Of a DNA stretch of 64,000 nt, positions 26,360 to 62,609 are shown one piece after another. Made by a program: the position numbers and the translations under genes. Each line of letters begins with the position of its first letter. The first letter of the stretch is position 1. Under the pieces are notes generated by a model. The model saw nothing but the letters and a program-made list of their open reading frames with translations, had not been told where the DNA came from and did no database searches. Source of the DNA: Ascoidea asiatica JCM 7603 (Eukaryota > Fungi > Ascomycota); assembly GCA_001600695.1 (NCBI GenBank), contig BCKQ01000001.1, positions 526,577 through 590,576 on the forward strand, written 5' to 3'.

Positions 26360-26397
<38 letters not shown>

Positions 26398-29352: not shown

Positions 29353-29384
<32 letters not shown>

Positions 29385-30350: not shown

Positions 30351-30387
<37 letters not shown>

Positions 30388-34503: not shown

Positions 34504-34514
34504 TAAATAAATAA

Positions 34515-34552
<38 letters not shown>

Positions 34553-34608
34553 TATAATATTAAATAAAAATACATAATGATATATAATTGTTTATATATT
34601 AATGAATA

Positions 34609-44007: not shown

Positions 44008-45822
44008 CTAGAAATCTGTAAGCAGATAAGTTCCTCTTTTCGCATGCCTTCTATACCAACTAATATCAACAAATCTCAAAATATCCACCGATTCGTTTCT
44101 TGTATATCCACTTTGAGTAGTATCTGACAAACTTTTCACAAATTTTAAATCCTTATTACCTCTAAGATCAAGATACTTTATATTTTTATTAAGAGTTTTT
44201 CCAATCAAAATCGATATGGATTTAATTTTATTATATTGTAAATCTAAAATCTTAAGATTACCTAAATAGCTAAAATTTTTAATTTCACTTAATTCATTTT
44301 TTGAAATAAATAATGATTTCAAATTTACTAAATTATTTAAATTTTCTAAATTTTTAATATGATTTGAATTTAAAAATAATTTCTTTAAGTTAATTAACTC
44401 ATTTAAATATTCTATTTTGGCAATTTGATTTTTTGATAAATCTAAAACTGTGAGATTTTTTAAATTATCTAGATTTTCAATTTTTTTAATTTTATTAGTA
44501 TTTAGATAAAGAATTTTTAAAAATTTAAATGAATCTAATCTACCAATTTTTTCTATTTGATTTAAACTTAAATCTAAAATTTCAAGATTTACTAAATTAC
44601 CTAAATTTTCAATTTCACTTAGATTATTTCCTGAAATGTATAAAGATTTTAAATTTACTAAATCATTTAAATTTTTCAATTTAGATATTTGATTTCCTGA
44701 TAAATTTAAAATTTCAAGATTTTTTAAATTATTTAAATTTTCAATTTTTTCAATTTTATTATTTTGTAAATATAATTTTTTTAAATTAATTAAATAATTT
44801 AAATTTTCTATTTTAACTATTTTATTTCTTGTAAAATTCAAGACCTTTAAATTATCTAGAAGAGAAATTTCATCAGTTAAATTTGAGATAAAATTATCTG
44901 ATAAATCTAAAAATATTAAATTTTTTGGTAAATTTTCTAACACTGAGATTAAAGATTTATTGAAATATAAAACTTTTAAACTTTTAAAACCTTTTAAAAA
45001 ATCAGGGATTATTTTAAATTTTAAACCTTTTAAAGCAATAAATTTTAAATTTGATAAATTTGAGAAATTTGCACAATTGAATAAAAAAGGTTCATCTTGT
45101 TCTGGATTAAAAAATTGCTCACAATATCTAATATATAAATATTCAAGATTTGTACAAAATTTTAAAATATATAAAAAAGTAGCATTTTTTAAGTATGAAT
45201 TTACTAATGTTTTTAAGTATTTACAAGATAATAAAAACTCAATTGAAAAATTAAAATAAGAATCTCCAATAATTTCATAATTTGAAAAATCTCTAAGAGA
45301 TAAAATTTGTCTTGCTTGAGTACCAGAGTTAAATTTAAAATTAAATTCAGTATAATTAGGATATTGAGTATCAGTTACTGAATTTTGATATACAAAATTC
45401 TTTAAATTTTCGAATTGATCTTTTAAATTCAAACTGAAATCTTTTGCAAGAAGAAAAAATTCAAAATCTAATTTTAAATTAGTTATGAAATTTGAATTTT
45501 GTTTAAAAAATTTTGAAATATAAATTATATTATTTTCATTATAAGCTTCTGCGATTTTGAAATAAACAATATTTTTCCACTGATTTTTATCAATTTCTAT
45601 AGATAGTGAAATTGAATTTTTAAGTGATTTCAAAGATTTTAGATTTGTTGGTCTCTCTTTACTTTTATAAAAAATACTAATATTTTTAAAAAGTAAATCT
45701 TTTGAGATATATTGAATTGAATGAATATTACTTAAAGTTAATAACCATAAGATTTTAGAATTTAAATTATTAAATATCTGTCTGATTATTTGGGAATCCA
45801 ATGAATATTCAATTAAAATCAT
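44008..45822 (-). CDS. Putative F-box + SDS22-like LRR protein, copy A (about 604 aa)
   Basis: Start placed at ATG 45822 (MILIEY...) by homology with the paralogs. Degenerate F-box-like LDSQIIRQIFNNLN; 22-aa LxxLxLxxNxIxxIxNL repeats. Confidence 0.85.
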   Translation of the reverse strand: MILIEYSLDSQIIRQIFNNLNSKILWLLTLSNIHSIQYISKDLLFKNISIFYKSKERPTNLKSLKSLKNSISLSIEIDKNQWKNIVYFKIAEAYNENNIIYISKFFKQNSNFITNLKLDFEFFLLAKDFSLNLKDQFENLKNFVYQNSVTDTQYPNYTEFNFKFNSGTQARQILSLRDFSNYEIIGDSYFNFSIEFLLSCKYLKTLVNSYLKNATFLYILKFCTNLEYLYIRYCEQFFNPEQDEPFLFNCANFSNLSNLKFIALKGLKFKIIPDFLKGFKSLKVLYFNKSLISVLENLPKNLIFLDLSDNFISNLTDEISLLDNLKVLNFTRNKIVKIENLNYLINLKKLYLQNNKIEKIENLNNLKNLEILNLSGNQISKLKNLNDLVNLKSLYISGNNLSEIENLGNLVNLEILDLSLNQIEKIGRLDSFKFLKILYLNTNKIKKIENLDNLKNLTVLDLSKNQIAKIEYLNELINLKKLFLNSNHIKNLENLNNLVNLKSLFISKNELSEIKNFSYLGNLKILDLQYNKIKSISILIGKTLNKNIKYLDLRGNKDLKFVKSLSDTTQSGYTRNESVDILRFVDISWYRRHAKRGTYLLTDF

Positions 45823-45929
45823 TTGAGTGTAGTTGAATTGATATTCGATATTTGATATTGGAAATAATAAAAAAAACAGAGATTTATGTGACTTTTCATT
45901 ACCAAGGAGAATTAAGTTACGATGGCTCA

Positions 45930-47110
45930 CATATATATATATATATATATATATATCAATGAAGTTAAATAAGAATCAAATAATAATAATGTTCTAGTTC
46001 CTCTTCTTATAGTTAATTGACTCATGATTGTTTGAGATTTAGTTTCAAAATTTGTACATATTCGTAACAAAATAAGACTCGAGAAATTATCATAGATTAG
46101 TTTGATCTAAGTTTTGAATATAATAAGATAAAATTTGATAAGCACATTGAGATGAGTTGGTCAACAAGATTGATTCCATTAAATATATTATCTTTCCAAG
46201 ATGAACTTCAATAAATATTGTTTATAATGTCTTGATTGCCATGAAAACTTCGTTTGTTTTTTTAAAGCTTCTTTTATTTGTTTTGGTTCTTTGGAAGTAC
46301 CACAGACATGGAACTTATTTGCATAGCAATACCCGCCCGTTTTTTGAGGGTCTTTGAGCCCCGCACTTTAGAATAGAATGCCCGATATATTTAACCACGT
46401 GTTACGTTTTTTAAATAGTTCCACTTTGAAAGGTTACATTTTCAGTAATAATTATCCAGTTTAATCAAGAAGATATTATATTATTATACAAGAAAGAGAA
46501 GTAGAAGAAAAAAATCGAGAGGCAAATAGGCCCTACAAATAGGCCCTACAAATAACAATAGAGCTGAACGATGATTATTATCATTTCACATGTGAATAAA
46601 AATCAGTCTATATAAAGTCTAGCTTTGATAAAAGCCTTTGTCTATTATTCTCAAGGAACAAATAAATTTATGGAATAATAGAAATGCTATTTAATTAAGT
46701 TTAGAGTATATTGGAAAATTCAGGGCACCTCTGCAGCCGTCGGTGAACCTAAACCTTAGTTTTTAGAATCAAATTCACCGACTTTTTTCTTTAAAAAAGG
46801 GTGCGATACTTGTTTATAATAAACTTTATAGGATTGTAAAAGCTTCCCAAAAATATTTATTAGAATAATAGAAAATTGAAAAAACACTTTTGAACCTTTT
46901 TATTCTTCTTTGGATTAATTAATGTAAAATACTTTTTACTCTACAGTATATATAAAATTTTAAATGGGAAAAGTGGTAATTTTACTGAGAGCCATAAAGA
47001 AAAATTGCATTTTTCTTGATTAATGATAGTGGTTATATTTGAAATGAACAATGAAGATTTTTTTTTTTTATTTTTTTGAATTTTAATCTTTGATAGTTTA
47101 TTGAGCTAAT
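45930..47110. repeat. A-B intergenic spacer, homologous to the B-C spacer (49050-50525): segmental tandem duplication
   Basis: Colinear shared blocks: ~46021-46210 vs ~49114-49300, ~46297-46366 vs ~49428-49497, ~46664-46779 vs ~50100-50217, and AATCTTTGATAGTTTATT near both right ends. Confidence 0.9.
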
Positions 47111-47132
47111 CGTGCCTAGGAAATAGAAAACG

Positions 47133-48974
47133 TCAAATCACTTCGCTTTCAATAACAATATTATTTCCCTTAGCTTGACATCTACTATACCAATGTATAT
47201 CAATAAATTTTAAATCATTTGAAATTTTTATTTGTTTAATATTATCTGGTAAATTTTCTAAAACTACTAAGGGATTCCTCCTGAGATCAAGATATTCTAA
47301 ATTTTTTAAATTTATGAAAAATTTTGGGATTTTCTTCAATTTATTAAATTTTAATTTTAAAATTGTTAAATTTGGTACTGAATTAAAAAAATTTTCTAAA
47401 AAATCTAAATTACGACTCTGAAGAAATTCAAGCCTAAATTCTTTTAAATTATTTAGATTTCGAAAACAATTATCATTATCATGAGTTGAAAATAAAATTC
47501 GGTTTCCTGATAAATTTAAAAAGGTAAGATTTTTTAAATTATTAATATTTTCCATTTTTTTAATTTGATTTGAAATAATTTGAAGAGATTTTAAATTTTT
47601 TAATGAATTTAAACCCTTTATTTTCCCAATCCGATTTTTATCGAGATTAAGAAATTTTAAATTTTTCAATGAACTTAATCCATTTATTTCTCTAATTTTA
47701 TTTCTTGATAAATTTAATACTTCAAGATTCTTTAAATTTTTTAAATTTTCTAGTTTTATAATTCTATTTTTTGATAAATCTAAAATTTTAAGATTCTTTA
47801 AATTACTTAAATTTTCAATTATTTGAATTTTATTTCTTTTTAAATATAATTTTTTTAAATTACTTAAATGATTTAAATTTTCAATTTTAATTATTCTATT
47901 TTTTGAAAAATTTAAAACTTCTAGATTATTTAAAAATAACATTTCATTAGTTATAGCTGGGATTCTATTAATAGATAAATCTAAAACAATTAAATTTTCT
48001 GGTAAATTTTTCAATTCTAAAATTGAAGCCGAATTAAAATATAAAACTTTTAAATTTTTAAAAATTTTTAAAAATTCAGGAATTATTATGAATTTGAAAT
48101 TTTTGAGAGCAAGAAATTTCAAATTTGATAAATATCTAATATTTGAAAGATGTAATAATTGTACCATATATGTATACGAATTGAATAAATATAAATATTC
48201 AAGATTTGAAGAAAATTTTAAAAGATTTGAGAATCTAGGATAGGTAAAAAATACATTTACTAATTTTGTTAAATTTTGACAAGATAATAATAAACCTGGA
48301 GAATAATCAAAAATTGAATTTTGAACAAATTCACTATTTGAAAATTCTTTTAGTGATAAAGTTTTTCTTGCTTCAATACCTGAATTGAATTTGTAATTAA
48401 ATTCAATATAATTATGTAGGCTTCGATAATTCAATGAATTTTGATATACAAAATTTCTTAAATTTTCAAATTGATTATTAAAATTTGAATTTATATTTGA
48501 ATTTAAAAATAAATCCTTTAAGATATAAAAAGATTTAAAATCTAATTTTAAATTAGTTATAAAATTTGAGTTTTTTTTGAAAAAGTTTAAATAAAAACTA
48601 AAATTAATTGAATCTAAATTATTTAAATCAAACTCAGTTATTTCTCCTATAGCATTTATGGCATTGAACCTAGAATGTTTAATTAAAATTTTAAAGAAAA
48701 TTGTATTTCTCCAAATATTTTTATCAATTATAAAAGAAAATGAATTTGAATTTTTTTTTAAAGATTCAAATTTTTTATATTTTTTTGATTTGTTTTTTAG
48801 ATTAACGAAAATACTAATGTTTTTAAAAATTAATTCTTTTGAAATATATTGGATAAAATTATTATCACTTAGAGTAAATAACCATAATATTTGAAAATTT
48901 AAATTACTTAATATTTCCCGAAGTAAATTGAATGGTACCGGATACTTGATTAAAATCATTTCCCTAATTTGCAT
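47133..48974 (-). CDS. Putative F-box + SDS22-like LRR protein, copy B (613 aa; alternative start 48959)
   Basis: MILIKYPVPFNLLREILSNLNFQILW F-box-like start, shared middle domain, 22-aa LRRs, C-terminal KFIDIHWYSRCQAK. Confidence 0.88.
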   Translation of the reverse strand: MQIREMILIKYPVPFNLLREILSNLNFQILWLFTLSDNNFIQYISKELIFKNISIFVNLKNKSKKYKKFESLKKNSNSFSFIIDKNIWRNTIFFKILIKHSRFNAINAIGEITEFDLNNLDSINFSFYLNFFKKNSNFITNLKLDFKSFYILKDLFLNSNINSNFNNQFENLRNFVYQNSLNYRSLHNYIEFNYKFNSGIEARKTLSLKEFSNSEFVQNSIFDYSPGLLLSCQNLTKLVNVFFTYPRFSNLLKFSSNLEYLYLFNSYTYMVQLLHLSNIRYLSNLKFLALKNFKFIIIPEFLKIFKNLKVLYFNSASILELKNLPENLIVLDLSINRIPAITNEMLFLNNLEVLNFSKNRIIKIENLNHLSNLKKLYLKRNKIQIIENLSNLKNLKILDLSKNRIIKLENLKNLKNLEVLNLSRNKIREINGLSSLKNLKFLNLDKNRIGKIKGLNSLKNLKSLQIISNQIKKMENINNLKNLTFLNLSGNRILFSTHDNDNCFRNLNNLKEFRLEFLQSRNLDFLENFFNSVPNLTILKLKFNKLKKIPKFFINLKNLEYLDLRRNPLVVLENLPDNIKQIKISNDLKFIDIHWYSRCQAKGNNIVIESEVI

Positions 48975-50559
48975 CTAAAATAACTGTTATATTAAACAAC
49001 AAAAAGTATCTGAAATAGCTTTCATTATTTATAAGGATTAAAAAAACATATATATATATGAAGTTGAGTAATATTCAGATTGAGGTTGAATTTATCTTCT
49101 ACTCATTACTAGACTCTTGATTGTTTGAGATTTAGTATCAAAATTCAAACATATTCGTAACAAAATAAGACTCGAGAAATTATCATTGATTAGTTTGATG
49201 TAAGTTTTGAATAGAACAAGATGAAATTTGACAAATACATTATGATAAATTGATTAGTAAAATTGATTCCATTGAATTTATTATCCTTCGAAGATGAATG
49301 AGAAGAAAAGAAAGCTTATTCAACAATATAACTAAAACTAAAAAAAAAGAAGGTTCAAAGAATTAAGACAATATAAACAATATTTATTTTACTATGCTCG
49401 ATGTATTTTGTCGCCCTGCTTTTGGCCGTACCACAGACATGGCACTTATTTCCATGGCGACAGTCGCCCGTTTTACGAGGGTCAGTCGGCCCCGCACATT
49501 ACAACGGGACCTTCCCAAATCCAGTATAAAATTCCCAATTAGTAAGGTCACATGATATAAATTGTATATTGTACCACTTTTAAAGGTAGCCTGTTTGAAT
49601 TTGATATTTACAGTTTACGTTTGAATTAAAACTAAAGGAATATCAATAATATTCGTAAAAGAAGAAATAAAAATAAAATAATTAAAATATAAAGGATATT
49701 TTCATTTTCTTTTTTACCTGATTTAGGATTTTAAAGAACTAAAACACTAACAATTTCTTCTAAATCTAAGTTTTCACTCTTTAATAAAGTAGCGGTTTTT
49801 GAAAATGAACCAGTTGACCATTCTTGGTTTTTACAATTACCATTTAGTAGTTTTTTCTTTATGATGTTCAATCTTTCCACAAAGTGTAATTCCATTATTT
49901 TCTCAATTTAAACCAATAATAGTTTTATCCTTTAAGACACCTGGAATTGAAACATGTAATTCCTTCCTAATATTGGATAATGCAACTAATAAATTTCATA
50001 TTAATCAATAGATTGTTGAACCAAAAATAGAAAATATAAATTTTAGTTCAGATCTTCTGGAAAAAGCTTTTCTATTTTTACTATTTTCAATGAATTAGGA
50101 AATTTATGAAAAATAATAGATAATTATTTCAATTAAATTTAGAATATTTCAGAAAATTTACTCAGCTTCTGCAGCCGCCGGTGAGCCTAAATCTTATTTT
50201 TTAGAATCGAATTCACCTTAAGTTTGTTTTCAAATAACTGGTAAAGTTTCTTCTTTATAAGAAAAATTAGAAATGACTTTTAAACTTTTATATTCTTCTT
50301 TGGATTTTTAATTGATCTAGGATAATTTTTAGTTCATATTTTGAATTTTCTTATTAAAGAAGTTGAAATTATACTGAGTCATGAGCCAAAAGGCAATTCC
50401 TCTTGATTGTTGAGGGTTGTAACTTGGTGCAAGATTATAACTTTAAAAGAAAACTTTTATGACACTTGTTTTAGAATATATTATAGAAAAAAATCATAGT
50501 AAAATCTTTGATAGTTTATTAAGTTATCTATAACGATATAATGTAATATACTTACGTAT

Positions 50560-52368
50560 TTAGTCTTGTATAACAACATAATTTCTTTTAGCTTGACATC
50601 TACTATACCAATGTATATCAATAAATTTCAAATCACTTGGAATTCTGATTTCTTCAATATCATCTGGTAAATTTTCCAAAATTACTAAAGGATTCTCTCT
50701 AAGATCAAGATATTTTAAATTTTTAAAATTTAAGAAAAATTTTGGTAATTTCTTTATAAGATTCTTTTTTAAAGTTAAAACTGTTAAATTTGTTAATGAA
50801 TTTGAAAAATTTTTTAAAAAATTCAAATTACGAATAAAATTCTCTTGAAGTTTAATTTCCTTTATATTATTTAAGTTTTCAAAACAATTATCATCATTAC
50901 TTGAAGTAGAAATTTCATTAAAATTAAAATTAAAATTTATATATTCTAAATTTTTTAAATTATTAATATTCTCAATTTTTGTAATGGAATTGCTTTTAAG
51001 ATAAAGAACTTTTAAATTTTTTAATGAATTTAACCCACTTAGTTTTTTAATTCTGTTTTTTGATAAATTTAACACTTTAAGATTAATTAAATTATTTAAA
51101 TTTTCTAGTTTTTTGATTCTATTTTTTGATAAATCTAAAAATTTTAGATTATTTAAGTTATTTAAAATTCCAATATTATCAATTTTATTATTTTGTAAAT
51201 ATAATTTTTTTAAATTAATTAAATAATTTAAATTTTCTATTTTAACTATTTTATTTCTTGTTAAATTCAAGACTTTTAAATTATCTAAAAGAAAAATTTC
51301 ATTGGATATTATTGAGATATTATTATATGATAAATCTAAAAAAATTAAATTTTGTGGTAAATTTTTTAAAATTGAAATTAAAGCATAATTAAGATATAAA
51401 ATTTTTAAATTTTTGAAATTTTTGAAAAATTCAGGAATTATTCTAAATTTTAATTTTTCTAAATTAAGAAATTTTAAATTTAATAAATTCTCAAAATTAG
51501 TAAGATCTAATGGATAAAATCTATATGTATAAGTATATGATAAATATAAATATTCAAGATTTGAACAAAATTTTAAAAGATCTAAAAATTTATAATATCT
51601 TAAATATATATTTGTTAATTTAGTTAAATTTTGACAAGATAATAATAAACCTGGAGAAAAATTAAAATTTGAATTTTTTATAATATCATTATTTGAAAAT
51701 TCTTTAACTGATAAAGTTTTTCTTGCTTCAAAACCAGAATTGAATTTATAATTTAATTCAAAATGATTTCTATGTAAACTTTGGTCCATTGTATCTTGAT
51801 ATATAAAATTTTTTAAATTTTCAAATTGATTATTAAAATTTGGATTTATATTTGAATTTAAAAAAAATTTTTTTAAGATATAAAAAGATTTTAAATCTAA
51901 TTTTAAATTGGTTATAAAATTTGATTTTTTTTTGAAAAAGTTTGAATAAAAATTAAAATTAATTGAATTAAAATTAATTGAATTAAATTTATTTAAATTA
52001 TTTGAATTTCTTAATTTATAAAAATTGATATCATTAATTATAATTTCAAAAAAAGTAGTATATTTCCAAATATTTTCATCAATTATAAAAGAAAATGAAT
52101 CTGAAATTTTGATTGAAGATTTGAAATTTTTGAAAATTTTGAAATTTTTTAAATTGTTAAATTTTTTAAATTTTTTAAAATTTTCAAGTATAATTGATTT
52201 ATTTTTTAAATTAGCAAAAATACTTGTGGTTTTAAAAAATAAAACTTTTGAAATACTTTGAAAGAAATTATTATCACTTAAAGTAAATAACCGTAATATT
52301 TGAGAATTTAAATTACTAAATATTTCTCGAATTATATGGACAGGTACTTGATACTTAATTAAGATCAT
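50560..52368 (-). CDS. Putative F-box + SDS22-like LRR protein, copy C (602 aa)
   Basis: MILIKYQVPVHIIREIFSNLNSQIL F-box-like start; closest paralog of B; same C-terminal KFIDIHWYSRCQAK. Confidence 0.88.
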   Translation of the reverse strand: MILIKYQVPVHIIREIFSNLNSQILRLFTLSDNNFFQSISKVLFFKTTSIFANLKNKSIILENFKKFKKFNNLKNFKIFKNFKSSIKISDSFSFIIDENIWKYTTFFEIIINDINFYKLRNSNNLNKFNSINFNSINFNFYSNFFKKKSNFITNLKLDLKSFYILKKFFLNSNINPNFNNQFENLKNFIYQDTMDQSLHRNHFELNYKFNSGFEARKTLSVKEFSNNDIIKNSNFNFSPGLLLSCQNLTKLTNIYLRYYKFLDLLKFCSNLEYLYLSYTYTYRFYPLDLTNFENLLNLKFLNLEKLKFRIIPEFFKNFKNLKILYLNYALISILKNLPQNLIFLDLSYNNISIISNEIFLLDNLKVLNLTRNKIVKIENLNYLINLKKLYLQNNKIDNIGILNNLNNLKFLDLSKNRIKKLENLNNLINLKVLNLSKNRIKKLSGLNSLKNLKVLYLKSNSITKIENINNLKNLEYINFNFNFNEISTSSNDDNCFENLNNIKEIKLQENFIRNLNFLKNFSNSLTNLTVLTLKKNLIKKLPKFFLNFKNLKYLDLRENPLVILENLPDDIEEIRIPSDLKFIDIHWYSRCQAKRNYVVIQD

Positions 52369-53449
52369 TTCATTAAGTTGAATTGAATTGAATTGAATTG
52401 AATTGAATGTAATTATTATATTAAATAACCGGAATTTGAAAAGATCTCATTGTTAATAAGGATTGATTTAACTTATATAGATATAAATGATGTTGGATAG
52501 TAATCAAATTATATTTTGATTCATCATCTTATTGTTTAATTGATTCATTATTGTTTGATTCATCGTTGTTTGAATTTGAATTTAGACATATTCATAACAA
52601 TAAAGAAACATAAGAAATCATGATTGATTACTCTGGTGCAATAACTTGACTAACTTGGTTCCATTGATTGAATTCATTGAGTTCATTGAGTTGATTGAGT
52701 TCATTGAGTTCATTTAATACTTTCTTCTTGCTGACTGAAATAACTGCAAATATAACAAAATATCATTGTTTATTTCTTGTTTATCTCTTGTTTACTTTTA
52801 CTTCTTTGTTTACTTTCTTGTATATTTCCAAAAAACAGGTGCACGTGATCCCTTCGGCTTTGGGATCTCCTTTGATTTTTTCGGGGTCTTTTTGTAAATT
52901 TCTGACCCGAGAAAAACTTCTTCGGGGTCCTTGTTGTTTTTGCAGAAATGGGATTAAAAATGGGACTAAAAACGGTAACAAATTCTCAATTACTTTCACC
53001 GGTGCCAAAAGATTCAAAAATATAAAATAAAATACTCTAATATAATATAATATAATATAATATAATATAATATAATATAACAAAATGATATATAATTTTA
53101 CCTTCTAAGGACAAACTAAACTTAAGAGATTTAGTGTCTAGAATAAATTCAATTCAATCAAAATCAGTCCACGATGACATGAATATCATAGAGATTATTA
53201 ATCTTGATTTGCAATTATTCAATTGATTTTGCTAAAGCTTGTCAAGTGTTTATGGATGATGTTTTATCCTTTATCTATCAATGAAATAAAATACAGTCTC
53301 AGTCTCAGTCTCAGTCAATACTCTAAGTAATATTGTAACTTATTAATATTAAAACTCTTATTATTTAATTCTATATTCCAATACTTAAACAATTATTTAT
53401 ATAAGAGAAATGAAAAGAAAATCAGTATTTTAATATACTCATAAATCAT

Positions 53450-55726
53450 TTAAGTAATTAAAATTTTTCGAATTAAAAACTCAGGTCCAAAAGATTTTAT
53501 AGTTCTTGGAATTTTAACTTTTTCAATATTTTTTGGAAGATTTTCAATAGCTATTAAAGAACTATTTCCTCTAACATTGAGGATTTTTAAACTTTCAACA
53601 TATCTCATAATATTTGAAATATTTTTAATATTATTATTTTCTAAATTTAAATTTCTTAATTTTGATAATGGATTACAAAAATTAATTAAAAAAATTAAAT
53701 CAACAATATAATTATTTGAAAGATTAATTTTTCTTAAATTATTTAAATTTTTAAACGCATATTTATCTTCATGAACATTTTTTGAAATTGAAATTTGATT
53801 TCCTGATAAATCTAAAACTATAAGATTTTTTAAATTTTCTAAATTTTCAATTTTTTTAATTTCATTCATATTAAGATAAAGACATTTTAAAAATTTTAAT
53901 GAATTTAATCCTTCAATTTTCTTAATTTGATTTGAACTTAAATCTAAGATTTCAAGATTTATTAAATTATTTAAATTTTCAATTTCATTTAAATAATTTT
54001 TTGAGATAAATAGAGATTTTAGATTTACTAAATCATTCAAATTTTCTAATTTGACTATTTGATTTGAATTTAAAAATAATTTCTTTAAATTAATTAACTT
54101 ATTTAAATTTTCTAATTTAATTATTTCATTTTCTGATAAATCTAAAACTGTGAGATTTTCTAAATTATTTAAATTTTCAATTTTTTTAATCTTATTTTTA
54201 TTAAGATAAAGAGATTTTAAAAATTTTAATGAATTTAAACCATTAATTTTTTTAATTTTATTAGTATTTAGATAAAGAATTTTTAAAAATTTTAATGAAT
54301 CTAATCCACCAATTTTTTCTATTTGATTTGAACTTAAATCTAAGATTTCAAGATTTTTTAAATTATTTAAATTTTCAATTTCATTTAAATTACTTTCTGA
54401 AATATATAAAGTTTTTAAATTTACTAAATTATTTAAATTTTCTAATTTATAAATTCTAGTTTCTATTAAAATTAATTTTTTTAAATTAATTAACTCATTT
54501 AAATTTTCTAATTTATTTATTACATTTTTTGATAAATTTAAAAGTGTAAGTTTTTTTAAATTATTTAAATTTTCAATTTTTTCAATTTCATTATCTTGTA
54601 AATATAATCTTTTTAAATTTTTTAAATTATTAATATTTTCTATTTTATCTATAAGATTAGAAGATAAATCTAAAACTTTTAAATTATTTAAAATAGAAAT
54701 TTCATTATTTATAATTGAAATAGAATTATCAGATAAATTTAAAAAAATTAAATTTATTGGTAAATTTTCTAAAATTGAAATTTTAGAATTATTAAGATAT
54801 AAGATTTTTAAATTTATAAAATTTTTTAAAAAATCAGGAATTTTTTTAAATTCAAAATTTTCTAAAGATAAATATTTTAAATTTGATAAATTTTTAAAAT
54901 TTTTAAAATTTTTTGAATAATTAATAGAATTAAATTGATTAAAATTAATAATTCTAAGATCTAAATATTCAAGATTTAAACAATTTTTTAAAATATATAA
55001 AAATTCAGGTATTCTTAAATATAAATTTATTAATTTTTTTAAAAAAATACATGAATTAAAAAATTGTAAAGAAAAATCAAAATTTATATTTTCAATAATT
55101 TGATAATTTGAAAATTCTTCAAGTGATAAAATTTTTCTTGCTTCAAAACCGGAATTAAAATTATAATTAAATTCAATATAATTTGTATTAAAATTATAAA
55201 TTGAAGAATGTTGAAATACAAAATTTTTTAAATTTTGAAATTGATTATTAAAATTTGGATTAATATATGAAATTGAATTTAATTTTAAAAAAAAAAGTTT
55301 TAAAATTGAGAAAGATTGAAAATCTAATTTTAAATTAGTTATAAAATTTGAATTTTTTTTAAAAAAAGATGAAAAAAAATTATAAAAATTTAAAGAATTT
55401 GGTTCTTCATTTCTTGATTTTAAAAAAATTAAATTTTTCCAATTATTTTTATTATAATTATTATCAATTAATAAAGAAATTGAATCTGATTTTCTTTTAA
55501 TTAATAAATTTTTATTTAAAAAAGATAATTTTTTTAATAATTTTTTATTTTTTGAAAATGATTTTAAATTATAAATAATACTAATTTTTTTAAAAATTAA
55601 ATCTTTTGAGATATATTGAATAAAATGAATATCACTTAAAGTAAATAACCATAAAATTTGATTATTTAAAATTATGAATATTTTTTTAATTAATTCATAA
55701 GGTAATTGATACTTAATTAAGATCAT
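53450..55726 (-). CDS. Putative F-box + SDS22-like LRR protein, copy D (758 aa)
   Basis: MILIKYQLPYELIKKIFIILN gives the best match to the F-box LPxEL..IF..L consensus; longest LRR array, with internal higher-order duplication. Confidence 0.9.
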   Translation of the reverse strand: MILIKYQLPYELIKKIFIILNNQILWLFTLSDIHFIQYISKDLIFKKISIIYNLKSFSKNKKLLKKLSFLNKNLLIKRKSDSISLLIDNNYNKNNWKNLIFLKSRNEEPNSLNFYNFFSSFFKKNSNFITNLKLDFQSFSILKLFFLKLNSISYINPNFNNQFQNLKNFVFQHSSIYNFNTNYIEFNYNFNSGFEARKILSLEEFSNYQIIENINFDFSLQFFNSCIFLKKLINLYLRIPEFLYILKNCLNLEYLDLRIINFNQFNSINYSKNFKNFKNLSNLKYLSLENFEFKKIPDFLKNFINLKILYLNNSKISILENLPINLIFLNLSDNSISIINNEISILNNLKVLDLSSNLIDKIENINNLKNLKRLYLQDNEIEKIENLNNLKKLTLLNLSKNVINKLENLNELINLKKLILIETRIYKLENLNNLVNLKTLYISESNLNEIENLNNLKNLEILDLSSNQIEKIGGLDSLKFLKILYLNTNKIKKINGLNSLKFLKSLYLNKNKIKKIENLNNLENLTVLDLSENEIIKLENLNKLINLKKLFLNSNQIVKLENLNDLVNLKSLFISKNYLNEIENLNNLINLEILDLSSNQIKKIEGLNSLKFLKCLYLNMNEIKKIENLENLKNLIVLDLSGNQISISKNVHEDKYAFKNLNNLRKINLSNNYIVDLIFLINFCNPLSKLRNLNLENNNIKNISNIMRYVESLKILNVRGNSSLIAIENLPKNIEKVKIPRTIKSFGPEFLIRKILIT

Positions 55727-56555
55727 TGAATGTAATGTAATTGAATATAATATAATGTAATGTAGTTGAATGTAATTGAATTGAAAGTAATAAGAGAGAT
55801 GGAATATAAAAAGTTTATGAGAAATAAGTTCATTTAAATATTTGAATCAGATCATTCCATCCTTTTTTCTTCAATGAATTAATGAATGAATGAATGAATG
55901 AATGAATGAATGTATTTATTGATTAATTGATTAGATGAATCATTGAATGTTTGATTCATAAATGTTTTGAATATAATATATAGTTTAAAAACATATTGAA
56001 AAGAATAGAAAAGGAAGAATAATTACTTGTATAGAATGAATCTTTTGATATAAGTTTTAAGTGAAATAAGAAGTTTAGTAGTTATAATGATTGATTATAA
56101 TTATGATTCTACGAAATATATTATGTATAAGTATTTTCTTTTCTTTGAATTGATAGTCAATTGAATATATTCTATAATAAATTGTAATAAATCCTTTGTT
56201 TATTTTCATCCTTGTTTTGTTTTGTGTTGTGTTGTTTTGTTTTGTTGTTTATATTTGTTTTAAATCCTCTCCGTCACGTGGCCGTGGAATATAAACCAAA
56301 CCAACGGTACCAATGAACAATCAGACAATAGCAGAATGTAATAGAACAGTAACAAGAAGTAAGATAATAAGATAATGAGATAATAAGATAATGACTGTTG
56401 CTTTCATTTCATTTCATAAACACAAACAGAAATAAAACGTGACCCTCTTTGGACCGTTCCCAGCTTTGTGGGTTTGTTCATTGCTGATGCAGCAATCCAT
56501 TCTCAGTATACTAAAAATATGATACATATACATGTAAAATATATAAAAAAAGAAA

Positions 56556-56656
56556 TCTCCCGGGGGTGAGTCGAACACCCGATCTCAAGATTACTTTGTA
56601 TACTCACAAAGTGAAACATTACAGTCTCGCGCCTTAGCCAGCTTGGCCACCGGGAG
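56556..56656 (-). tRNA. tRNA-Tyr (GTA) with a 27-nt intron (56592-56618)
   Basis: Exon 1 CTCCCGGTGGCCAAGCTGGCTAAGGCGCGAGACTGTAA and exon 2 ATCTTGAGATCGGGTGTTCGACTCACCCCCGGGAGA; C1:G72 and A73 identity elements; intron at canonical 37/38; T7 terminator at 56545-56551. Confidence 0.97.
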
Positions 56657-57640
56657 TGTTTTTCTGTTTTTTTGTTTTTCAGAATTACTATTAACTTCAA
56701 TATCCCACAATAAACAATTTGTTGTTGACTCGGATAATTTATACGAAGTGCCCTGTGGGGGTTTGCAAGTTTTCTTTAATCGCTACGCAGCGCGGTTTTA
56801 TTCTGCTGCGCAAAGCAGGGGTAATAAAAGACACAATGACAAAGACCACCGTAGAGTACGTTGACTAGAACTTTGTAATTTGGTCCAACATTTATTAAAG
56901 TTACAATGCATATAATGCATACTTTGGATCTGAGGAGAGTAAAGAATACCGAGGGGGAAAAAAACAAAATTACCTAATCAGGTAATATAAACTGTTTTTC
57001 ACCACTGATGTGGCTAGTGCCGGTCAAGACCGACTGCTTTTTCTTTTCTAGCCAATTAAAATGTCGCTCGCTAGAATCTCAAAACGGGGAATTACCAAAT
57101 TCATCAATATCACACAAAACTTATAATTCCTTAACAATTTGAAAAAATGTGAATGATTACGAAAATAAATTAATAAATTAATAAAAGTTTATTTCAATTT
57201 TGACTCCAAGAATTATTACTTACTTTAATAACATATTTACTTATCAATGATCACTATATACTATATATGATAAGAAATGAAGAAATGATCAATCCTTTAT
57301 ATGTATTTAATGATTGTATTATCTTTTACTTACTTACATAATATCAGATTTGAGTGAATTAAAATTGACTTTTTACAATATATATAGTATAATATGTAAT
57401 ATAATATATAATATAATATACAACACATAGTATTTTGAAATAAATTAAAACTATTCTTACTTCATAATCTTACTCAGGATATACAACTTAGACTAATAAA
57501 CTAATCTTTGTTTTAGCTTATCAATGATATCATTACCACTTTTTTAAAATATATTGATGATTCTGAGTTTCAAACTTTCTTGAAAATACTTCATCATGAT
57601 TGGTGAATTTATAAATATTTCGACTATTTCATTTCATTTC

Positions 57641-57770
57641 AATTCATTTCAATTCATTTCAATTCATTTCAATTCATTTCAATTCATTTCAATTCATTTC
57701 AATTCATTTCAATTCATTTCAATTCATTTCAATTCATTTCAATTCATTTCAATTTATTTCAATTTATTTC
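57641..57770. repeat. Decamer minisatellite (AATTCATTTC)x11 plus 2 variant units
   Basis: Read directly: perfect units at 57641-57750, then AATTTATTTC x2. Confidence 0.95.
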
Positions 57771-58663
57771 TTTCCAATTTATATCGAAACCAATATTTCT
57801 AATATATAAAACTTAATAATTCAATAAACAATAATTATTGTTTTTATAATCAAATGAGAATATTCGTATTCTATTAACTTTTCATACAATTTTAGTAACT
57901 GTTTATTTATTTATTTATTGTCTTCAACACAGTGGACTAATTAATAATATAAACCATACACTCTCACATTGAAAACAACCTCAACCTCAACCACAACTAC
58001 CAACTACCAACTACCACCTTTGATAACAACATCACTAATACTATTATTCATATTCTTGATAGATAAAATAGATAAAATAGATAATATTCAACTATTCTAG
58101 CTCCAGTTTACATTAATATTTTTCACATTTCCTCTCTTCAACCAGATTGGTCACTGACAAAAACTACGCTTTTCATGGCATTATATTCGACTAACGAGTA
58201 ATCTGTTTACAAACAAAATACCTGTTCTTCCTCGACTTTACTCTGTATTTTCTCTAACCTATTCAATAACCTATTCAATTACCTATTCAATTACTTTTAC
58301 TTATTCAATTACAAATTATGAAATAATTAAATAATTATTATTCAAAATTATTATTATTTTATAAATCTTATATATATCTAAACCTGTCTTTCAAATTATC
58401 TTTTCTTTACTCAGTCAATAAAAATTTTATTTCTATTCTTCTTAAACTTATTAAAACTTATTAAAACTTCTTAATAATAATAATAATAATAACTCTTTTT
58501 TTAATATCAATTTAATTAATCACAATCAAAAAATATAAAACTTTATATATATCATATTCTATACCATTTTTTTTATCAACTATTTATCAGATTCTATTAA
58601 CTTCATCTTCATCTTCAACTTAAACTACAAATATCACTTACAAATATAAAAATTCATTTTAAA

Positions 58664-60361
58664 ATGAAATCTTTAAATTCTTTTGAAATATCTCATATAA
58701 AAATAGATGATTATAAATCTATAATACCCTATGATTCAATAGAAAAAGGGTTAAATTTTAAAAATTTAGAAAATTTTATTCAAAATGATAATATTAATAG
58801 TATTTTTATTAAAAAATTAAAAAATTTATCTCCAAATCTTATTAAACAAATAGTCAAATATCTTCCAATTGAATTAATTCATTTTTTATCATATTCAAAA
58901 ATCTCAATAATTAGAGAAATCTCAATTAAAAAATTATATGAATCTTTGATTATTTGTGAAGATGATGATGATGATGATGGTGACAATGATGATGACAATG
59001 ATGAAGATAATGATGAAGATAACGATGATGATGATGATAATGATGGTAAATTAATTCTTAATCCTGGTGATGATATTTTTAAACATTCAACTGAAGCTCA
59101 AATTATTGATTTAAATGATTATGAATATATTCCATTAGCTAAAAAATTAAATATAAATATTGAATCTAAAATTCTTAAACAATTATTCTTTAGTTTTTCT
59201 TCTAAATTTATTTTCTCAAATTTAATTTCAATAAATATTTGTGATCGAAATTGGCAAGATAATTTTGAAGAAAATTGGTCATTTATAAGATTTTTAACAA
59301 ATTCAAAAAATTTTCCAAGATTAAAATCTTTAAAATTAATTGGTAATGAAATTAAATTTGATTATGATATAAATTTTAATTATAATTTTAATTTAAATTT
59401 ATTTAAAAATTTCTTAAATTTAACAAATTTAAATTTATCTGGTAATAGATTTACATCTAATGATTTAAAACCATTAAGTGATTTAAAAAATTTAATTAAA
59501 TTAAATATTTCTGAAAATTATTTTTTCGCTTATAAAAAACAAAACTCTATAAGTTTTGATTTCTTAAATAATTTAATTAATTTAAATTATTTAAACCTTT
59601 CTGATAATTATATTTCTGAAATTCCTTTAAATTTAGAATTTTTAACTAAATTAAAAACTTTAGATTTATCTTCAAATAAAATAAGTAAAATTGAAAATTT
59701 AAAAAACTTATCTTCACTTATTAAATTAGATTTATCATTTAATAAAATTCTTGAAATCTCAGATGATTTATTATATCTTTCAAATTTAAAAATATTAAAT
59801 TTACATAAAAATTCAATTAATAAAATTCAAAATGTAAAAAATCTTAAAGATTTAATAAATTTAAATTTAGCTTTCAATAATTTAACTAAAATTGAAAATA
59901 TTTCATTTCTAGAAAATTTAAGAAAATTGATCTTATCAAATAATCAAATTAATCTTTCAAATAACAATAATAATAATGACAATAATAATACAATTAATCT
60001 CAATAATAAAAAGAATAAGAATAATGAATCAGAATTCCCATTACTTCCTTTAAAAGATAAATTAGAAGTTTTATCTATAAATAACAATGAACTCACCAAA
60101 CTTCCAAAATATTTCAATCATTTCAAAAATTTAAAATATTTAGATTTATCATTCAATCCAATTCAATTAACTGAATTTCAAGAAATTTGTGATTTTCCAA
60201 GAGATGTTAAAGTTATTAATTTTATTGGTATTCATTTAAATGAAATGCATGTAAGTTATATTAATAATTTTTGTAGTAATATAAGAATTTCAAATAACTC
60301 AACTTATCAAAAAAATAGTACTTTGAAATTACCACTTCTTAAAAGAAGAAGATTTCAATAG
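58664..60361 (+). CDS. Putative F-box + LRR protein, divergent copy E (565 aa) with acidic tract
   Basis: LKNLSPNLIKQIVKYLPIELIHFLS..IREISIKKLYE F-box-like segment, Asp-rich tract, then about 11 LRRs. LPKYFNHFKNLKYLDLSFNP parallels LPKFFLNFKNLKYLDLRENP in copy C. Confidence 0.85.
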   Translation: MKSLNSFEISHIKIDDYKSIIPYDSIEKGLNFKNLENFIQNDNINSIFIKKLKNLSPNLIKQIVKYLPIELIHFLSYSKISIIREISIKKLYESLIICEDDDDDDGDNDDDNDEDNDEDNDDDDDNDGKLILNPGDDIFKHSTEAQIIDLNDYEYIPLAKKLNINIESKILKQLFFSFSSKFIFSNLISINICDRNWQDNFEENWSFIRFLTNSKNFPRLKSLKLIGNEIKFDYDINFNYNFNLNLFKNFLNLTNLNLSGNRFTSNDLKPLSDLKNLIKLNISENYFFAYKKQNSISFDFLNNLINLNYLNLSDNYISEIPLNLEFLTKLKTLDLSSNKISKIENLKNLSSLIKLDLSFNKILEISDDLLYLSNLKILNLHKNSINKIQNVKNLKDLINLNLAFNNLTKIENISFLENLRKLILSNNQINLSNNNNNNDNNNTINLNNKKNKNNESEFPLLPLKDKLEVLSINNNELTKLPKYFNHFKNLKYLDLSFNPIQLTEFQEICDFPRDVKVINFIGIHLNEMHVSYINNFCSNIRISNNSTYQKNSTLKLPLLKRRRFQ

Positions 60362-62533
60362 TGATAATATATTATTTAGAATAGAATATATTAATAATCA
60401 GAATATATATATACTGTATATATTTACATATACTTTATATATGTTTTATAGGACTTTTTTTTTTTATAATTTTTATAATTTAGATAGTAATGAAAAAAAT
60501 AGAAGACCAAGACCAAATGGTATGACACTTTTCTAATTTTGATAGAAAAATGATCTAAAAAAAGAAAGCTTAATTTTTCTTGTCGTAGTTCTTTTGAAAA
60601 AAAAAAAACAAGTCTCAAGAAGAAAAAACTTCTGGAAATCTGATTTATCAATTTCATCAAATTTTAATGGTTTTTTCAAAGATTTTGTTGTTAATAAAAT
60701 TGAATGAAGCATATGTATCTTTAAAGCTCATTCTTTAAGCTTTTGAGATTTTGTCCAATTGTCTCAAAAAAAAAGCAAGCAGCAAGTCTTAAAAACTAGT
60801 TTGTGATAATTTTTTAATAAGAAAAACAGATAATTAATTACAGTTACAAAAAGATTAGGATCAAACAACATTTTTTTTAATTTGCAATTTGAAAATAACT
60901 TTATGACTCTTGATTTTGAAAAAATAATAAACGGTTCCATCACTCCATGGGAAAATTATTGGGGAGCATAGTTGTTTGAATAAAGCCAATAAATCCCTAT
61001 GATATTTTTTTCTTTTAAGGTCCTTTTCATAGACTTATTCATTAAAAGAAATTGTAAAATCATAACATTTTTCTTTCAATTGAGAATATTCTATTATACT
61101 GAAAAATAAATTTTGAATAAAATATCAATAAGCTTCATGAGATCAAAAAAATTCAATCATTTTTTTTATTGTTTTGTGATTGAAATTAATTCTCTTAAAA
61201 GATTTTTTTCACTTGACAACATCTTAAAAAACAAAGTAGTTTTCATGTTTTAATAAAAAGTTTTTATCTATTGAAATATTTTGTGAATAAATTCACATTT
61301 GAAAAATACTTTAAATTAAAGAGGTCAGAAATTGTAAAAAAAATATTCAGATAGGTAAAAAAAAAAAACCCCATTGAAACAGAAAAGAGCCTTTAATGAA
61401 TTTGACAGTTTGATATAATCAATGACTAGAAGCCCAATCCTTATAAAATAGTTGAAGAAGTCGACTACACTATTTTTTAGACTCTCTAAACTGAATTTCT
61501 TGAAAGACAGAAATTATACCTGGGATTTCATCTATTGGATGTTTCAATTAAAGCATTAAAGCATTTTATATGGAATGATTTCAAGTTCCTTTTTATCTAG
61601 ATTAAATATCATAAATTCACTCGGAAGGTTGATAATTAAGCTTAAGTAACTTTAATACATCTATAGAACAAGCTTTTTTAACAGAACCAGTTAAAAAAAA
61701 TATTCAAGACCCTTGGAGCCCACTGTACTTTATTTAAGTGGTATAATATGAAATTAACCTATAATTAAAAACAGAAACTTTGAATAGATACAGAGTAGAT
61801 AATAGAAAGTACAAAAGTACCATTTTAAAAAACATTTGCAAAAAAGTGTGGATTTATCAAAAAGATGTAATTCAAATTTGATATTTTATGAAAGTCCAAG
61901 AAAAAACAAAGGAAATAAAAAGGAAATTTCAAATTATTCCGGTAAAACTGGAGCAATAATCGGAGATTTTAGACGTTTTGTAAATCATAGGAAAGAACTT
62001 TGTGATCATGAAGCTAACCTCCTAATATTTGAATAAAAAAATCAAATATTGAACTGTTTTAAATCTCTCTCTTAATTCATATTGACCTCGAGAGACTCGA
62101 CCAAATTTAGTTTTACCGGAGAGTTATGCAATAGTGATAAAATCTAACAAGAAGTGAAACATTTTTGAAAGTCATGACAAGTAAGAGCAAAAATAGTTTA
62201 AATTCGAAATAAATGATAAATCATGTTTGTTTATCACAAAAAACTTGAAAGCAGGCAAAGAAAATACATTTCTCAAAAAGTCAGTGCGTAAAACATGCAT
62301 TATAAATTATAAACCAGAGTCGTTAGACCCCTTTTTTCTCTTTGGTTTCAAACATTGTTCGAAATATATCAAACTTCAGTTTCAAATGAAAGCATATGAT
62401 AGAGATTGGGAAGTTACAAGCAGCTCATTTAATACATTTTCTATTGAAGAATATTATATGTTGTTGATTGAATTTGTTTGATTTGTTGTCATAGTATGAA
62501 TTTGAAATCAAAACAGGCAGATTTATGATTTTG

Positions 62534-62534
<1 letters not shown>

Positions 62535-62584
<50 letters not shown>

Positions 62585-62609
62585 TATTATTATTATTATT
62601 TATTATTAT
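62535..62609. repeat. (TTA)n microsatellite with two interruptions
   Basis: Read directly. Confidence 0.9.

What the first reader, a model, noticed from the sequence alone, without database searches (positions are those of the whole stretch)
44008..60361. Five-gene cluster of putative F-box + variable-LRR proteins: candidate diversifying SCF receptor (innate-immunity-like) system in a yeast
Seen: four tandem minus-strand paralogs and one divergent copy. All have an N-terminal F-box-like motif and 22-aa SDS22-like LRRs; A-D also share a middle domain. The central regular LRR block has about 10, 7, 6 and 14 units in A, B, C and D (manual count). The Leu/Asn scaffold is fixed while the x positions of LxxLxLxxN vary. 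None has an obvious signal peptide or TM segment, so they look intracellular. Established: F-box proteins are SCF substrate adaptors. Budding yeasts normally have few, mostly single-copy ones (e.g. Grr1, with cysteine-containing LRRs), whereas birth-and-death F-box clusters in plants and nematodes have been proposed to target foreign proteins. Inference: a lineage-specific recognition repertoire against viral/killer-element, transposon or other non-self proteins.
Basis: partly seen in the sequence, partly recalled or inferred. Interest (0 to 1): 0.85.

Follow-up and report, generated by a model that had tools for sequence, protein, structure and literature searches.

The report
F-box-like LRR gene cluster, yeast
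Five neighbouring genes of an Ascoidea-like budding yeast belong to a family of about 35 intracellular leucine-rich-repeat proteins whose divergent N-terminal F-box is predicted to dock on Skp1, so they are most likely interchangeable substrate receptors of an SCF ubiquitin ligase; an immune-like role is possible but not shown.

Summary
Four tandem minus-strand genes (A-D) and one divergent plus-strand gene (E) are intact ORFs of 565-758 aa. Each has an N-terminal F-box-like motif and 22-residue SDS22-class LRRs; the regular blocks have 10, 7, 5-6 and 14 units. None has a TM segment.

New here:
- The five belong to a genome-wide family: 39 ORFs carry the motif and 34 of them have LRRs.
- The genome has three Skp1 paralogs.
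- The 'middle domain' of A-D is an irregular LRR-like module found only in their clade.

Standard Pfam misses the F-box (best E 0.011). Five weaker lines support it:
- The family profile hits the FBXL17 F-box in PDB (E 0.004).
- hhalign against this genome's canonical F-boxes gives E 1.5e-4.
- AF2 predicts three helices.
- The predicted complex with Skp1 scores 0.73 against a best control of 0.00.
- The interface is the canonical one.

The immune-like reading is untested. The LRR scaffold and the F-box are under purifying selection. Concave positions are no more variable than convex ones, and synonymous sites are half saturated. No RNA or population data could be obtained. No homologue of the N-terminal 200 residues was found in 1.84 billion representative proteins. 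The closest annotated relative is Ascoidea rubescens, and synteny with it ends just before the cluster.

Verdict: a new variant of F-box/LRR SCF receptors, expanded in a budding yeast. Other first-stage readers of this scan had noted F-box-like/LRR genes elsewhere in this genome.

The parts
44008..45822 (-). Gene A, 604 aa, F-box-like + middle module + LRRs (10 regular units)
   Evidence: ATG start matches the paralogs' MILI(K/E)Y N-terminus
45673..45810 (-). A: F-box-like motif (aa 5-50); the conserved Pro is replaced by Asp
44191..44850 (-). A: regular 22-residue LRR block (aa 325-544)
47133..48974 (-). Gene B, 613 aa, same architecture (7 regular units)
48810..48947 (-). B: F-box-like motif (aa 10-55)
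   Evidence: AF2 helices 15-23, 27-33, 39-53
47994..48734 (-). B: clade-specific middle region (aa ~81-327). It runs from a low-complexity linker into an irregular alpha/beta LRR-like module.
47463..47924 (-). B: regular LRR block (aa 351-504)
50560..52368 (-). Gene C, 602 aa, same architecture (5 regular units plus irregular ones); AF2 model at pLDDT 80
52219..52356 (-). C: F-box-like motif (aa 5-50). Residues 1-36 form the predicted interface with Skp1.
53450..55726 (-). Gene D, 758 aa, same architecture (14 regular units, including a duplicated block of 6 units)
53759..54682 (-). D: regular LRR block (aa 349-656). Units 3-8 and 9-14 are 75% identical in DNA, against 61-67% at other offsets.
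55577..55714 (-). D: F-box-like motif (aa 5-50)
58664..60361 (+). Gene E, 565 aa, from a different subfamily (clade with genes on contigs C8 and C19). It has a 50-aa leader, the F-box-like motif, an acidic tract and LRRs.
58820..58957 (+). E: F-box-like motif (aa 53-98)
45823..47132 (.). A-B spacer. It shares blocks of 78-80% identity with the B-C spacer (48975-50559), so the tandem duplication unit included the spacer.

Best explanation
The five genes encode soluble intracellular F-box/LRR proteins. They belong to a lineage-specific family of about 35 genes in an Ascoidea-like budding yeast. The roughly 45-residue N-terminal three-helix motif is a divergent F-box that docks on the C-terminal helices of Skp1; this genome has three Skp1 paralogs. 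The rest of the protein is one LRR solenoid. It starts with an irregular, subfamily-specific N-terminal part and continues with a variable number of SDS22-class 22-residue repeats, whose concave and ascending-loop positions (3, 8, 10, 12) carry the sequence diversity. The proteins would therefore act as interchangeable substrate receptors of SCF (Skp1-Cdc53-F-box) ubiquitin ligases, each copy presenting a different binding surface. The cluster grew by tandem duplication of gene plus spacer. Repeat number changed by block duplication of LRR units. Shown here: the ORFs, the LRRs, the family, the likeness to F-boxes and the predicted Skp1 docking. Inferred: assembly with cullin, ubiquitylation, and any substrate.
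For: F-box identity:
- Profile A1 of 23 family N-termini finds the FBXL17 F-box as its only significant PDB match, aligned at the LP motif (E 0.004).
- Pfam F-box is the family hit most often by single members (5 of 23, best E 0.011).
- hhalign of A1 against seven canonical F-boxes of the same genome aligns 47 columns in register (E 1.5e-4, probability 51%).
- The same profile also hits a non-LRR protein (L036) at the residues where Pfam F-box scores E 5.7e-4.
- AF2 gives three helices at residues 10-18, 22-29 and 34-46 of C.

Skp1 docking: ESMFold2 places C 1-120 on Skp1 with a score of 0.73; the best of 3 controls scored 0.00. The runs share at least 69% of their contacts, and the partner's pLDDT is 51. 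At this mark 51 of 78 solved complexes and 2 of 108 mismatched pairs passed. The interface is Skp1 101-157 with C 1-36, the canonical one.

LRR solenoid: Pfam hits; Foldseek top matches are internalin A, SDS22 and SHOC2. The middle module best matches the FBXL3 LRR (Z 8.5, rmsd 4.1, 163 residues aligned).

Family and machinery: 39 ORFs with the motif, 34 of them with LRRs; three Skp1 genes, each with both Skp1 domains; four cullin genes.

Selection: scaffold pN/pS 0.15 and F-box 0.45, against 0.84-0.94 elsewhere.
Against: - No member reaches Pfam's gathering score for F-box or F-box-like.
- No family member appears in whole-genome scans with PF00646 or PF12937.
- The hhalign probability is only 51%.
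- The Trp of helix 3 typical of F-boxes is absent, and copy A lacks the conserved Pro.
- The complex score may reflect the model's memory of solved Skp1-F-box complexes, and the partner's pLDDT is only 51.
- Only one copy (C) and one Skp1 paralog were tested.
- There is no expression evidence.
- F-box proteins can bind Skp1 outside SCF; in S. cerevisiae Ctf13 and Rcy1 do so (established knowledge).
Confidence: 0.6

Rival explanations
1. One reading: the family is a diversifying, innate-immunity-like repertoire. Its LRR surfaces are under positive selection to recognise non-self proteins (viruses, killer elements, transposons, competitors) and send them to SCF-dependent degradation.
For: - The expansion to about 35 genes comes with three Skp1 paralogs, as in plants and nematodes.
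- There are tandem clusters and changes in LRR number by block duplication.
- Sequence entropy is highest at LRR positions 3, 8, 10 and 12.
- Some copies are broken, as expected of birth-and-death evolution (L012, L037, L039).
- No positional orthologue lies at the syntenic site in A. rubescens.
- No homologue of the N-terminal 200 residues was found in 1.84 billion representatives.
Against: - Pooled pN/pS at concave positions is 0.94, against 0.84 at convex and 0.85 at middle positions, so the binding face carries no specific signal.
- pS is compressed by AT bias, and synonymous sites are 40-70% of the way to saturation, so true omega is lower.
- Most members have terminal branches of 1.5-3 changes per site, so the family is old.
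- No population, expression or challenge data are available.
Confidence: 0.12
2. The N-terminal motif is not a working F-box. The proteins are plain LRR scaffolds, for example SDS22-like regulators of PP1 or adaptors in signalling, and the motif is a family-specific N-terminal cap.
For: All members fall below Pfam thresholds. The LRRs are closest in structure to SDS22, SHOC2 and internalins, none of which has an F-box. Copy A lacks the Pro.
Against: The only significant PDB sequence match of the motif profile is an F-box. The profile-profile match with this genome's own F-boxes is in register. The motif is kept within the first 10 residues of most of the 34 LRR-bearing members, with pN/pS 0.45. 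Docking on Skp1 scored 0.73 against 0.00 for the controls.
Confidence: 0.15
3. The proteins bind Skp1 but work outside SCF ligases. In S. cerevisiae Ctf13 does this in CBF3 and Rcy1 in recycling. Here Skp1 would serve as a chaperone or assembly factor rather than as a bridge to cullin.
For: F-box/LRR proteins with non-SCF roles exist in budding yeast (established knowledge). Two of the three Skp1 paralogs are divergent, about 50% identical to the canonical one, and one has a long acidic insert.
Against: A family of about 35 members with variable surfaces fits receptor exchange on a common ligase core better than single structural roles. Nothing here tests the question directly.
Confidence: 0.1

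Closest known systems
FBXL-type SCF substrate receptors (human Skp2, FBXL3, FBXL17; yeast Grr1)
   Same: An N-terminal F-box is followed directly by an LRR solenoid. The family's motif profile matches the FBXL17 F-box. The irregular N-terminal LRR module is structurally nearest to the FBXL3 LRR. The predicted Skp1 interface is the canonical one.
   Different: The main LRRs are the 22-residue SDS22/internalin class, not the roughly 26-residue cysteine-containing class of FBXL proteins and Grr1 (class lengths from established knowledge). The F-box falls below Pfam thresholds. The family has about 35 paralogues in one yeast.
Expanded F-box families with Skp1 paralogues in plants and Caenorhabditis
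   Same: A large lineage-specific family, tandem clusters, decayed copies, and several Skp1 genes in the same genome.
   Different: Those families are hundreds strong, use other substrate domains in nematodes, and have published evidence of positive selection (for example 10.1101/2020.07.09.194670, title and abstract only). Here no positive selection could be shown.
[quoted passage not shown]
   Same: A fast-evolving, lineage-restricted LRR gene family in a budding yeast (PMC4352881, citing Butler et al. 2009).
   Different: Whether it has an F-box-like N-terminus is not known to me.
Ascomycota 'F-box domain-containing protein' and hypothetical-protein clusters, and giant-virus F-box + LRR_4 clusters, in the ESM Atlas
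   Same: These are the nearest clusters by language-model features for B 1-330 and for E (scores 0.92-0.95). Some of their members carry Pfam F-box together with LRR_4.
   Different: They are leads only. They share 111-149 of 256 features, below the 170 typical of true family members, and come without an alignment or E-value. The viral proteins are shorter (139-415 aa). AT-rich composition may drive the likeness.
SDS22 / internalin / SHOC2 LRR domains
   Same: The same LRR class by Pfam and by fold: Foldseek E 1e-12 to 1e-14, TM by target up to 0.83 for SDS22.
   Different: Those proteins have no F-box. SDS22 and SHOC2 regulate PP1, and internalins are secreted bacterial proteins.

Membership tests
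F-box domain (Pfam PF00646 / PF12937) | Sequence match to the curated profile at or above the gathering score | tested here: not met
   There is no hit at E<=1 on the five full proteins. On N-terminal pieces, 5 of 23 hit F-box (best E 0.011) and 2 of 23 hit F-box-like (best E 0.086), all below cut-off. No family member appears in whole-genome scans.
F-box domain (Pfam PF00646 / PF12937) | Remote homology to bona fide F-boxes, in register at the LPxE(I/L)(I/L)xxI(F/L) helix 1 | tested here: met
   The family profile matched against PDB finds the FBXL17 F-box at E 0.004. hhalign against 7 canonical F-boxes of the same genome gives E 1.5e-4, probability 51%, 47 columns. There is also a cross-hit on L036, which Pfam scores at E 5.7e-4. 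The support is moderate, not strong.
F-box domain (Pfam PF00646 / PF12937) | Three-helix fold of about 40-50 residues | tested here: met
   AF2 gives helices 10-18, 22-29 and 34-46 in C (block pLDDT 72-82) and 15-23, 27-33 and 39-53 in B (low pLDDT). No fold search was run on the isolated motif.
F-box domain (Pfam PF00646 / PF12937) | Binds Skp1 through helices H5-H8 of Skp1 | tested here: inconclusive
   This is a prediction only: score 0.73 against a best control of 0.00, with the interface at Skp1 101-157 and C 1-36. The pass may come from memory of solved complexes. Binding needs a bench test.
SCF substrate receptor | Assembles with cullin-1/Cdc53 and Rbx1 and promotes ubiquitylation of a bound substrate | not testable with these tools
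   The genome has the parts: 3 Skp1 genes and 4 cullin-domain genes.
SDS22-like LRR class | Tandem 22-residue units LxxLxLxxNxIxxIxxLxxLxx forming a curved solenoid | tested here: met
   Exact 22-residue spacing; LRR_4 E 1e-21 to 5e-47; solenoid at pLDDT above 90; SDS22 and InlA as top structural matches.
Diversifying immune-type receptor repertoire | Positive selection (omega > 1) concentrated on the ligand-binding face | tested here: inconclusive
   Pooled pN/pS is 0.94 at concave, 0.84 at convex and 0.15 at scaffold positions. Single pairs reach about 1.2 on 30-42 codons. Synonymous sites are 40-70% saturated and AT-biased. No orthologues or population data are available.
Diversifying immune-type receptor repertoire | Copy-number or repeat-number polymorphism between strains; induction on challenge | not testable with these tools

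The most novel reading that the evidence does not exclude
A budding yeast has an LRR-based intracellular surveillance system. About 35 F-box/LRR receptors with diversified concave faces, served by three specialised Skp1 paralogues, recognise foreign or selfish proteins (mycoviruses, killer plasmids, retrotransposon Gag, or prey and competitor factors) and feed them to the proteasome. This would be a fungal counterpart of the proposed plant and nematode F-box defence repertoires. It would also be the first LRR-type recognition repertoire in fungi, whose NLR-like proteins are known to lack LRRs (established knowledge).
Probability: 0.1. Interest if true: 0.85.

Novelty: new variant of a known kind. 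Interest (0 to 1): 0.55.

Why it matters
Budding yeasts are the reference system for SCF biology and are thought to have a small, mostly single-copy set of F-box proteins and a single SKP1 (established knowledge). This genome has about 10-13 Pfam-detectable F-box genes. It also has about 35 that standard annotation would call only 'LRR protein', and three Skp1 paralogues. If the F-box works, this lineage has roughly quadrupled its set of SCF receptors. That would make a compact, genetically tractable-looking case for studying how receptor repertoires and Skp1 paralogues co-expand. It also shows that profile thresholds hide a whole F-box family in AT-rich genomes.

Tried and rejected
Searches that found nothing useful:
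- B residues 1-330 against 5.8 billion proteins: nothing at E<=0.001.
- The full-length family profile A2: only generic LRR proteins, none with an F-box among the best 120.
- The exhaustive profile search with the non-LRR part (A3) against 1.84 billion representatives: 196 hits, nearly all on profile positions of about 185-313 (the LRR-like end), with one weak hit (E 1.6e-4) reaching position 86 and none covering the first 85 positions.
- Fold searches of the whole model and of the N-terminal model: LRR proteins only; the atlas search by shape was uninformative.
- Literature searches for yeast F-box/LRR expansions, the Candida IFA/FGR38 family and Ascoidea F-box genes: only one passing mention, in PMC4352881. 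Butler et al. 2009 is not held.

Data that could not be obtained:
- Expression and polymorphism: no RNA runs exist.

The RNA-family scans were cut around gene C, and the middle-domain HMM was built without C.
- Local codon statistics still read gene C from the window file.

Claims and ideas that did not hold:
- The tRNA-Tyr between D and E, claimed in another first-reader note, was not found by ARAGORN or by Rfam at gathering score.
- NG86 dN/dS as evidence of positive selection: rejected as uncalibrated in this composition.
- A giant-virus origin, suggested by the Atlas neighbours: not pursued, because composition alone could explain the likeness.


Full report
**1. What is there**

The stretch holds five long ORFs:

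| Gene | Window position | Strand | Length |
|---|---|---|---|
| A | 44008-45822 | - | 604 aa |
| B | 47133-48974 | - | 613 aa |
| C | 50560-52368 | - | 602 aa |
| D | 53450-55726 | - | 758 aa |
| E | 58664-60361 | + | 565 aa |

- The ORF lister extends A to a GTG at 45930. The ATG at 45822 gives the same MILI(K/E)Y start as B-D.
- The coding DNA is 12-18% GC. By composition about one codon in ten would be a stop, so these frames are maintained genes.
- CTG codons are almost absent, with one in A. A CUG reassignment would therefore not change the proteins.

**2. Host**

- Neighbouring genes encode a fungal SUN beta-glucosidase, DUF1746, HPC2, OST48, LETM1, Nrap, RPC40, Sec7 and a RabGAP.
- RPC40 is 76% identical to that of Ascoidea rubescens DSM 1968. 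It is at most 73% identical to any other yeast's.
- The assembly is 20.3 Mb in 71 contigs, at about 22% GC over this window.
- The host is therefore a budding yeast of the Ascoidea lineage. I do not name the species.
- The block LETM1-Nrap-DUF1746-RPC40-RabGAP is collinear with A. rubescens KV454489.1.
- Synteny ends right after the RabGAP gene. There the next gene is an ArfGAP, whose orthologue here is on contig C13. No ORF of 100 aa or more lies in the flanking gaps.
- The cluster thus sits at a synteny break, without a positional orthologue on that side.

**3. LRRs**

- All five proteins have strong Pfam LRR_4/LRR_8/LRR_9 matches.
- The AF2 model of C (mean pLDDT 80, above 90 over the solenoid) is a curved LRR solenoid from about residue 245 to the end.
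- Its best PDB matches are internalin A, Leptospira LRR proteins, SDS22 and SHOC2.
- Over 143 regular units of the family, positions 1, 4 and 9 are fixed by the pattern used to collect the units. Positions 6, 11, 14, 17 and 20, which that pattern held only to a hydrophobic class, are nearly invariant. Positions 3, 8, 10 and 12 are the most variable, above 3.2 bits.
- D owes its length to a duplicated block of six units. Units 3-8 and 9-14 are 75% identical in DNA, against 61-67% at other offsets.
- No TM segment or signal peptide is evident.

**4. The N-terminal motif is most likely a divergent F-box**

The case against: Pfam finds no F-box on the full proteins, and no family member appears in whole-genome scans with PF00646 or PF12937.

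The case for:
- The motif (consensus LPxHIIxxIfxxL..dkL.LL.LS) recurs at the N-terminus of many LRR ORFs across the genome.
- A profile of 23 of them (A1) has one significant PDB match, the F-box of FBXL17, aligned at the LP motif (E 0.004).
- Scanned singly, 5 of 23 pieces hit Pfam F-box (best E 0.011) and 2 hit F-box-like. No other family recurs.
- hhalign against seven canonical F-boxes of this genome aligns 47 columns in register (E 1.5e-4, probability 51%).
- The profile also picks up a non-LRR protein (L036) at the residues where Pfam F-box scores E 5.7e-4.
- AF2 predicts three helices there.
- The complex prediction of C 1-120 with the canonical Skp1 of this genome scored 0.73, against 0.00 for the best of three controls. 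The runs share at least 69% of their contacts, and the partner's pLDDT is 51.
- At that mark 51 of 78 solved complexes and 2 of 108 mismatched pairs passed. On eukaryotes the counts were 39 of 65 and 2 of 126.
- The interface is Skp1 101-157 with C 1-36, the canonical geometry.
- This may be recalled from solved Skp1-F-box complexes. It shows likeness, not binding.
- Copy A has Asp in place of the conserved Pro.

**5. The middle domain**

- A-D, together with one gene on C3 (L001) and one on C12 (L002), share a region with many invariant residues.
- An HMM of it, built without C, hits only those genes within the family.
- It has no detectable homologue elsewhere.
- In the models it is a disordered low-complexity linker (about residues 50-105) followed by irregular alpha/beta repeats that run into the regular LRRs.
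- Its best structural match is the LRR domain of FBXL3 (Z 8.5, rmsd 4.1, 163 residues), followed by many other LRR proteins at Z 6-8.
- I read it as a subfamily-specific irregular LRR or linker module, with moderate confidence. It is probably not a new fold.

**6. Family and machinery**

- The A1 profile finds 41 places in the genome.
- Among the loci I fetched, 39 ORFs carry the motif and 34 of these also carry LRRs.
- HMMER's bias filter hides most of them unless it is switched off.
- At three or more loci the F-box and LRR parts lie in different frames or ORFs. These are likely decayed copies.
- In the tree, A-D + L001 + L002 form one clade (SH-aLRT 100) with B and C as sisters. E groups with genes on C8 and C19 (99). 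The other members sit on very long branches (quick tree; the careful search did not finish).
- The genome has three Skp1 genes of 167, 178 and 306 aa. All carry both Skp1 domains and are about 50% identical to each other.
- It has four cullin-domain genes.

**7. Evolution**

- Pairwise amino-acid identity among A-D is 51-65%.
- NG86 pN/pS overall is 0.56-0.90.

| Site class | Pooled pN/pS |
|---|---|
| LRR scaffold | 0.15 |
| F-box | 0.45 |
| Concave x positions | 0.94 |
| Convex positions | 0.84 |
| Middle region | 0.85 |

- At identical amino acids the same codon is used in 77-87% of sites, against 67-76% expected for independent codons.
- Synonymous sites are thus 40-70% of the way to saturation, and pS is compressed by AT bias.
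- The data show purifying selection on the scaffold and the F-box and fast change elsewhere. They cannot show positive selection, and the concave face does not stand out.
- The A-B and B-C spacers share blocks of 78-80% identity, so the duplicated unit included the spacer.

**8. Relatives elsewhere and novelty**

- Sequence searches found no relative of the non-LRR part.
- The collections seem not to hold this genome's own proteins, since no self-hit appeared.
- The ESM Atlas gives, as leads only, Ascomycota clusters of hypothetical proteins. One cluster is auto-named 'F-box domain-containing protein'. There are also giant-virus clusters that combine LRR_4 with F-box.
- The only literature parallel I found is the fast-evolving FGR38-like LRR family of Candida (PMC4352881). 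Its relationship to this family is untested.
- I file the family as a new variant of F-box/LRR receptors. It has an FBXL-like layout with SDS22-class repeats and a sub-threshold F-box, and it is expanded together with Skp1 in a budding yeast.

**9. Limits**

- There are no expression data.
I worked beside those places afterwards, with the two local exceptions named under Tried and rejected.
- Only one receptor-Skp1 pair was modelled.
- The immune-like role remains a hypothesis, at about one in ten.

Noticed in passing
G000:C1:832621-833124 (+), G000:C14:74059-74595 (-), G000:C8:211373-212293 (-) (loci L021, L023, L022): There are three Skp1 paralogues of 167, 178 and 306 aa. All carry the Skp1_POZ and Skp1 domains and are about 50% identical to each other. 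The 306-aa copy has a Ser/Thr/Pro-rich leader and a long acidic insert. Budding yeasts are known for a single SKP1.
   Followed up: partly
window 24964-39838 and locus L047: The gene order LETM1-Nrap-DUF1746-RPC40-RabGAP is kept in Ascoidea rubescens KV454489.1. Synteny ends just before the Prm1-like gene and the LRR cluster. The next A. rubescens gene, an ArfGAP, maps to contig C13 here.
   Followed up: partly
window 45823-47132 and 48975-50559: The A-B and B-C spacers share four collinear blocks of 78-80% identity (259, 141, 84 and 70 bp). That is at least as similar as the flanking coding DNA (70-76%). They may be conserved regulatory blocks, or the coding sequence may evolve fast.
   Followed up: partly
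window 53759-54682: Gene D holds a super-repeat of six LRR units (units 3-8 against 9-14, 75% DNA identity). Another first-reader note called it a five-unit repeat. Offset 5 gives 67% and offset 6 gives 75%.
   Followed up: yes
window 55727-58663: Another first-reader note places a tRNA-Tyr gene between D and E. ARAGORN finds only a tRNA-Glu at 11117-11188 in the whole window, and Rfam at gathering score finds nothing in 52400-64000. An intron-containing tRNA could have been missed.
   Followed up: partly
loci L003, L008, L014, L016, L029, L032, L034: tRNA genes lie within about 2.5 kb of family genes at 7 of 36 fetched loci, 9 tRNA genes in about 230 kb. This may be a modest enrichment. No genome-wide tRNA density was computed for comparison.
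   Followed up: partly
loci L012 (C6:95000-102000), L037 (C11:569500-575500), L039 (C3:1291000-1296500): In these family copies the F-box-like part and the LRR part lie in separate ORFs or frames, or contain stops. They are likely pseudogenes, though assembly errors or introns are not excluded.
   Followed up: partly
window 58664-60361 (gene E, aa 99-127): A run of Asp/Asn/Glu about 30 residues long follows the F-box-like motif directly. It gives a spurious weak Pfam GP67 hit.
   Followed up: no
window 39956-42010: This 684-aa ORF next to the cluster has no Pfam hit at E<=0.001. Another first-reader note calls it a divergent Prm1.
   Followed up: no
The stretch encodes a low-complexity Asn/Phe-rich part of the middle region.
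   Followed up: no
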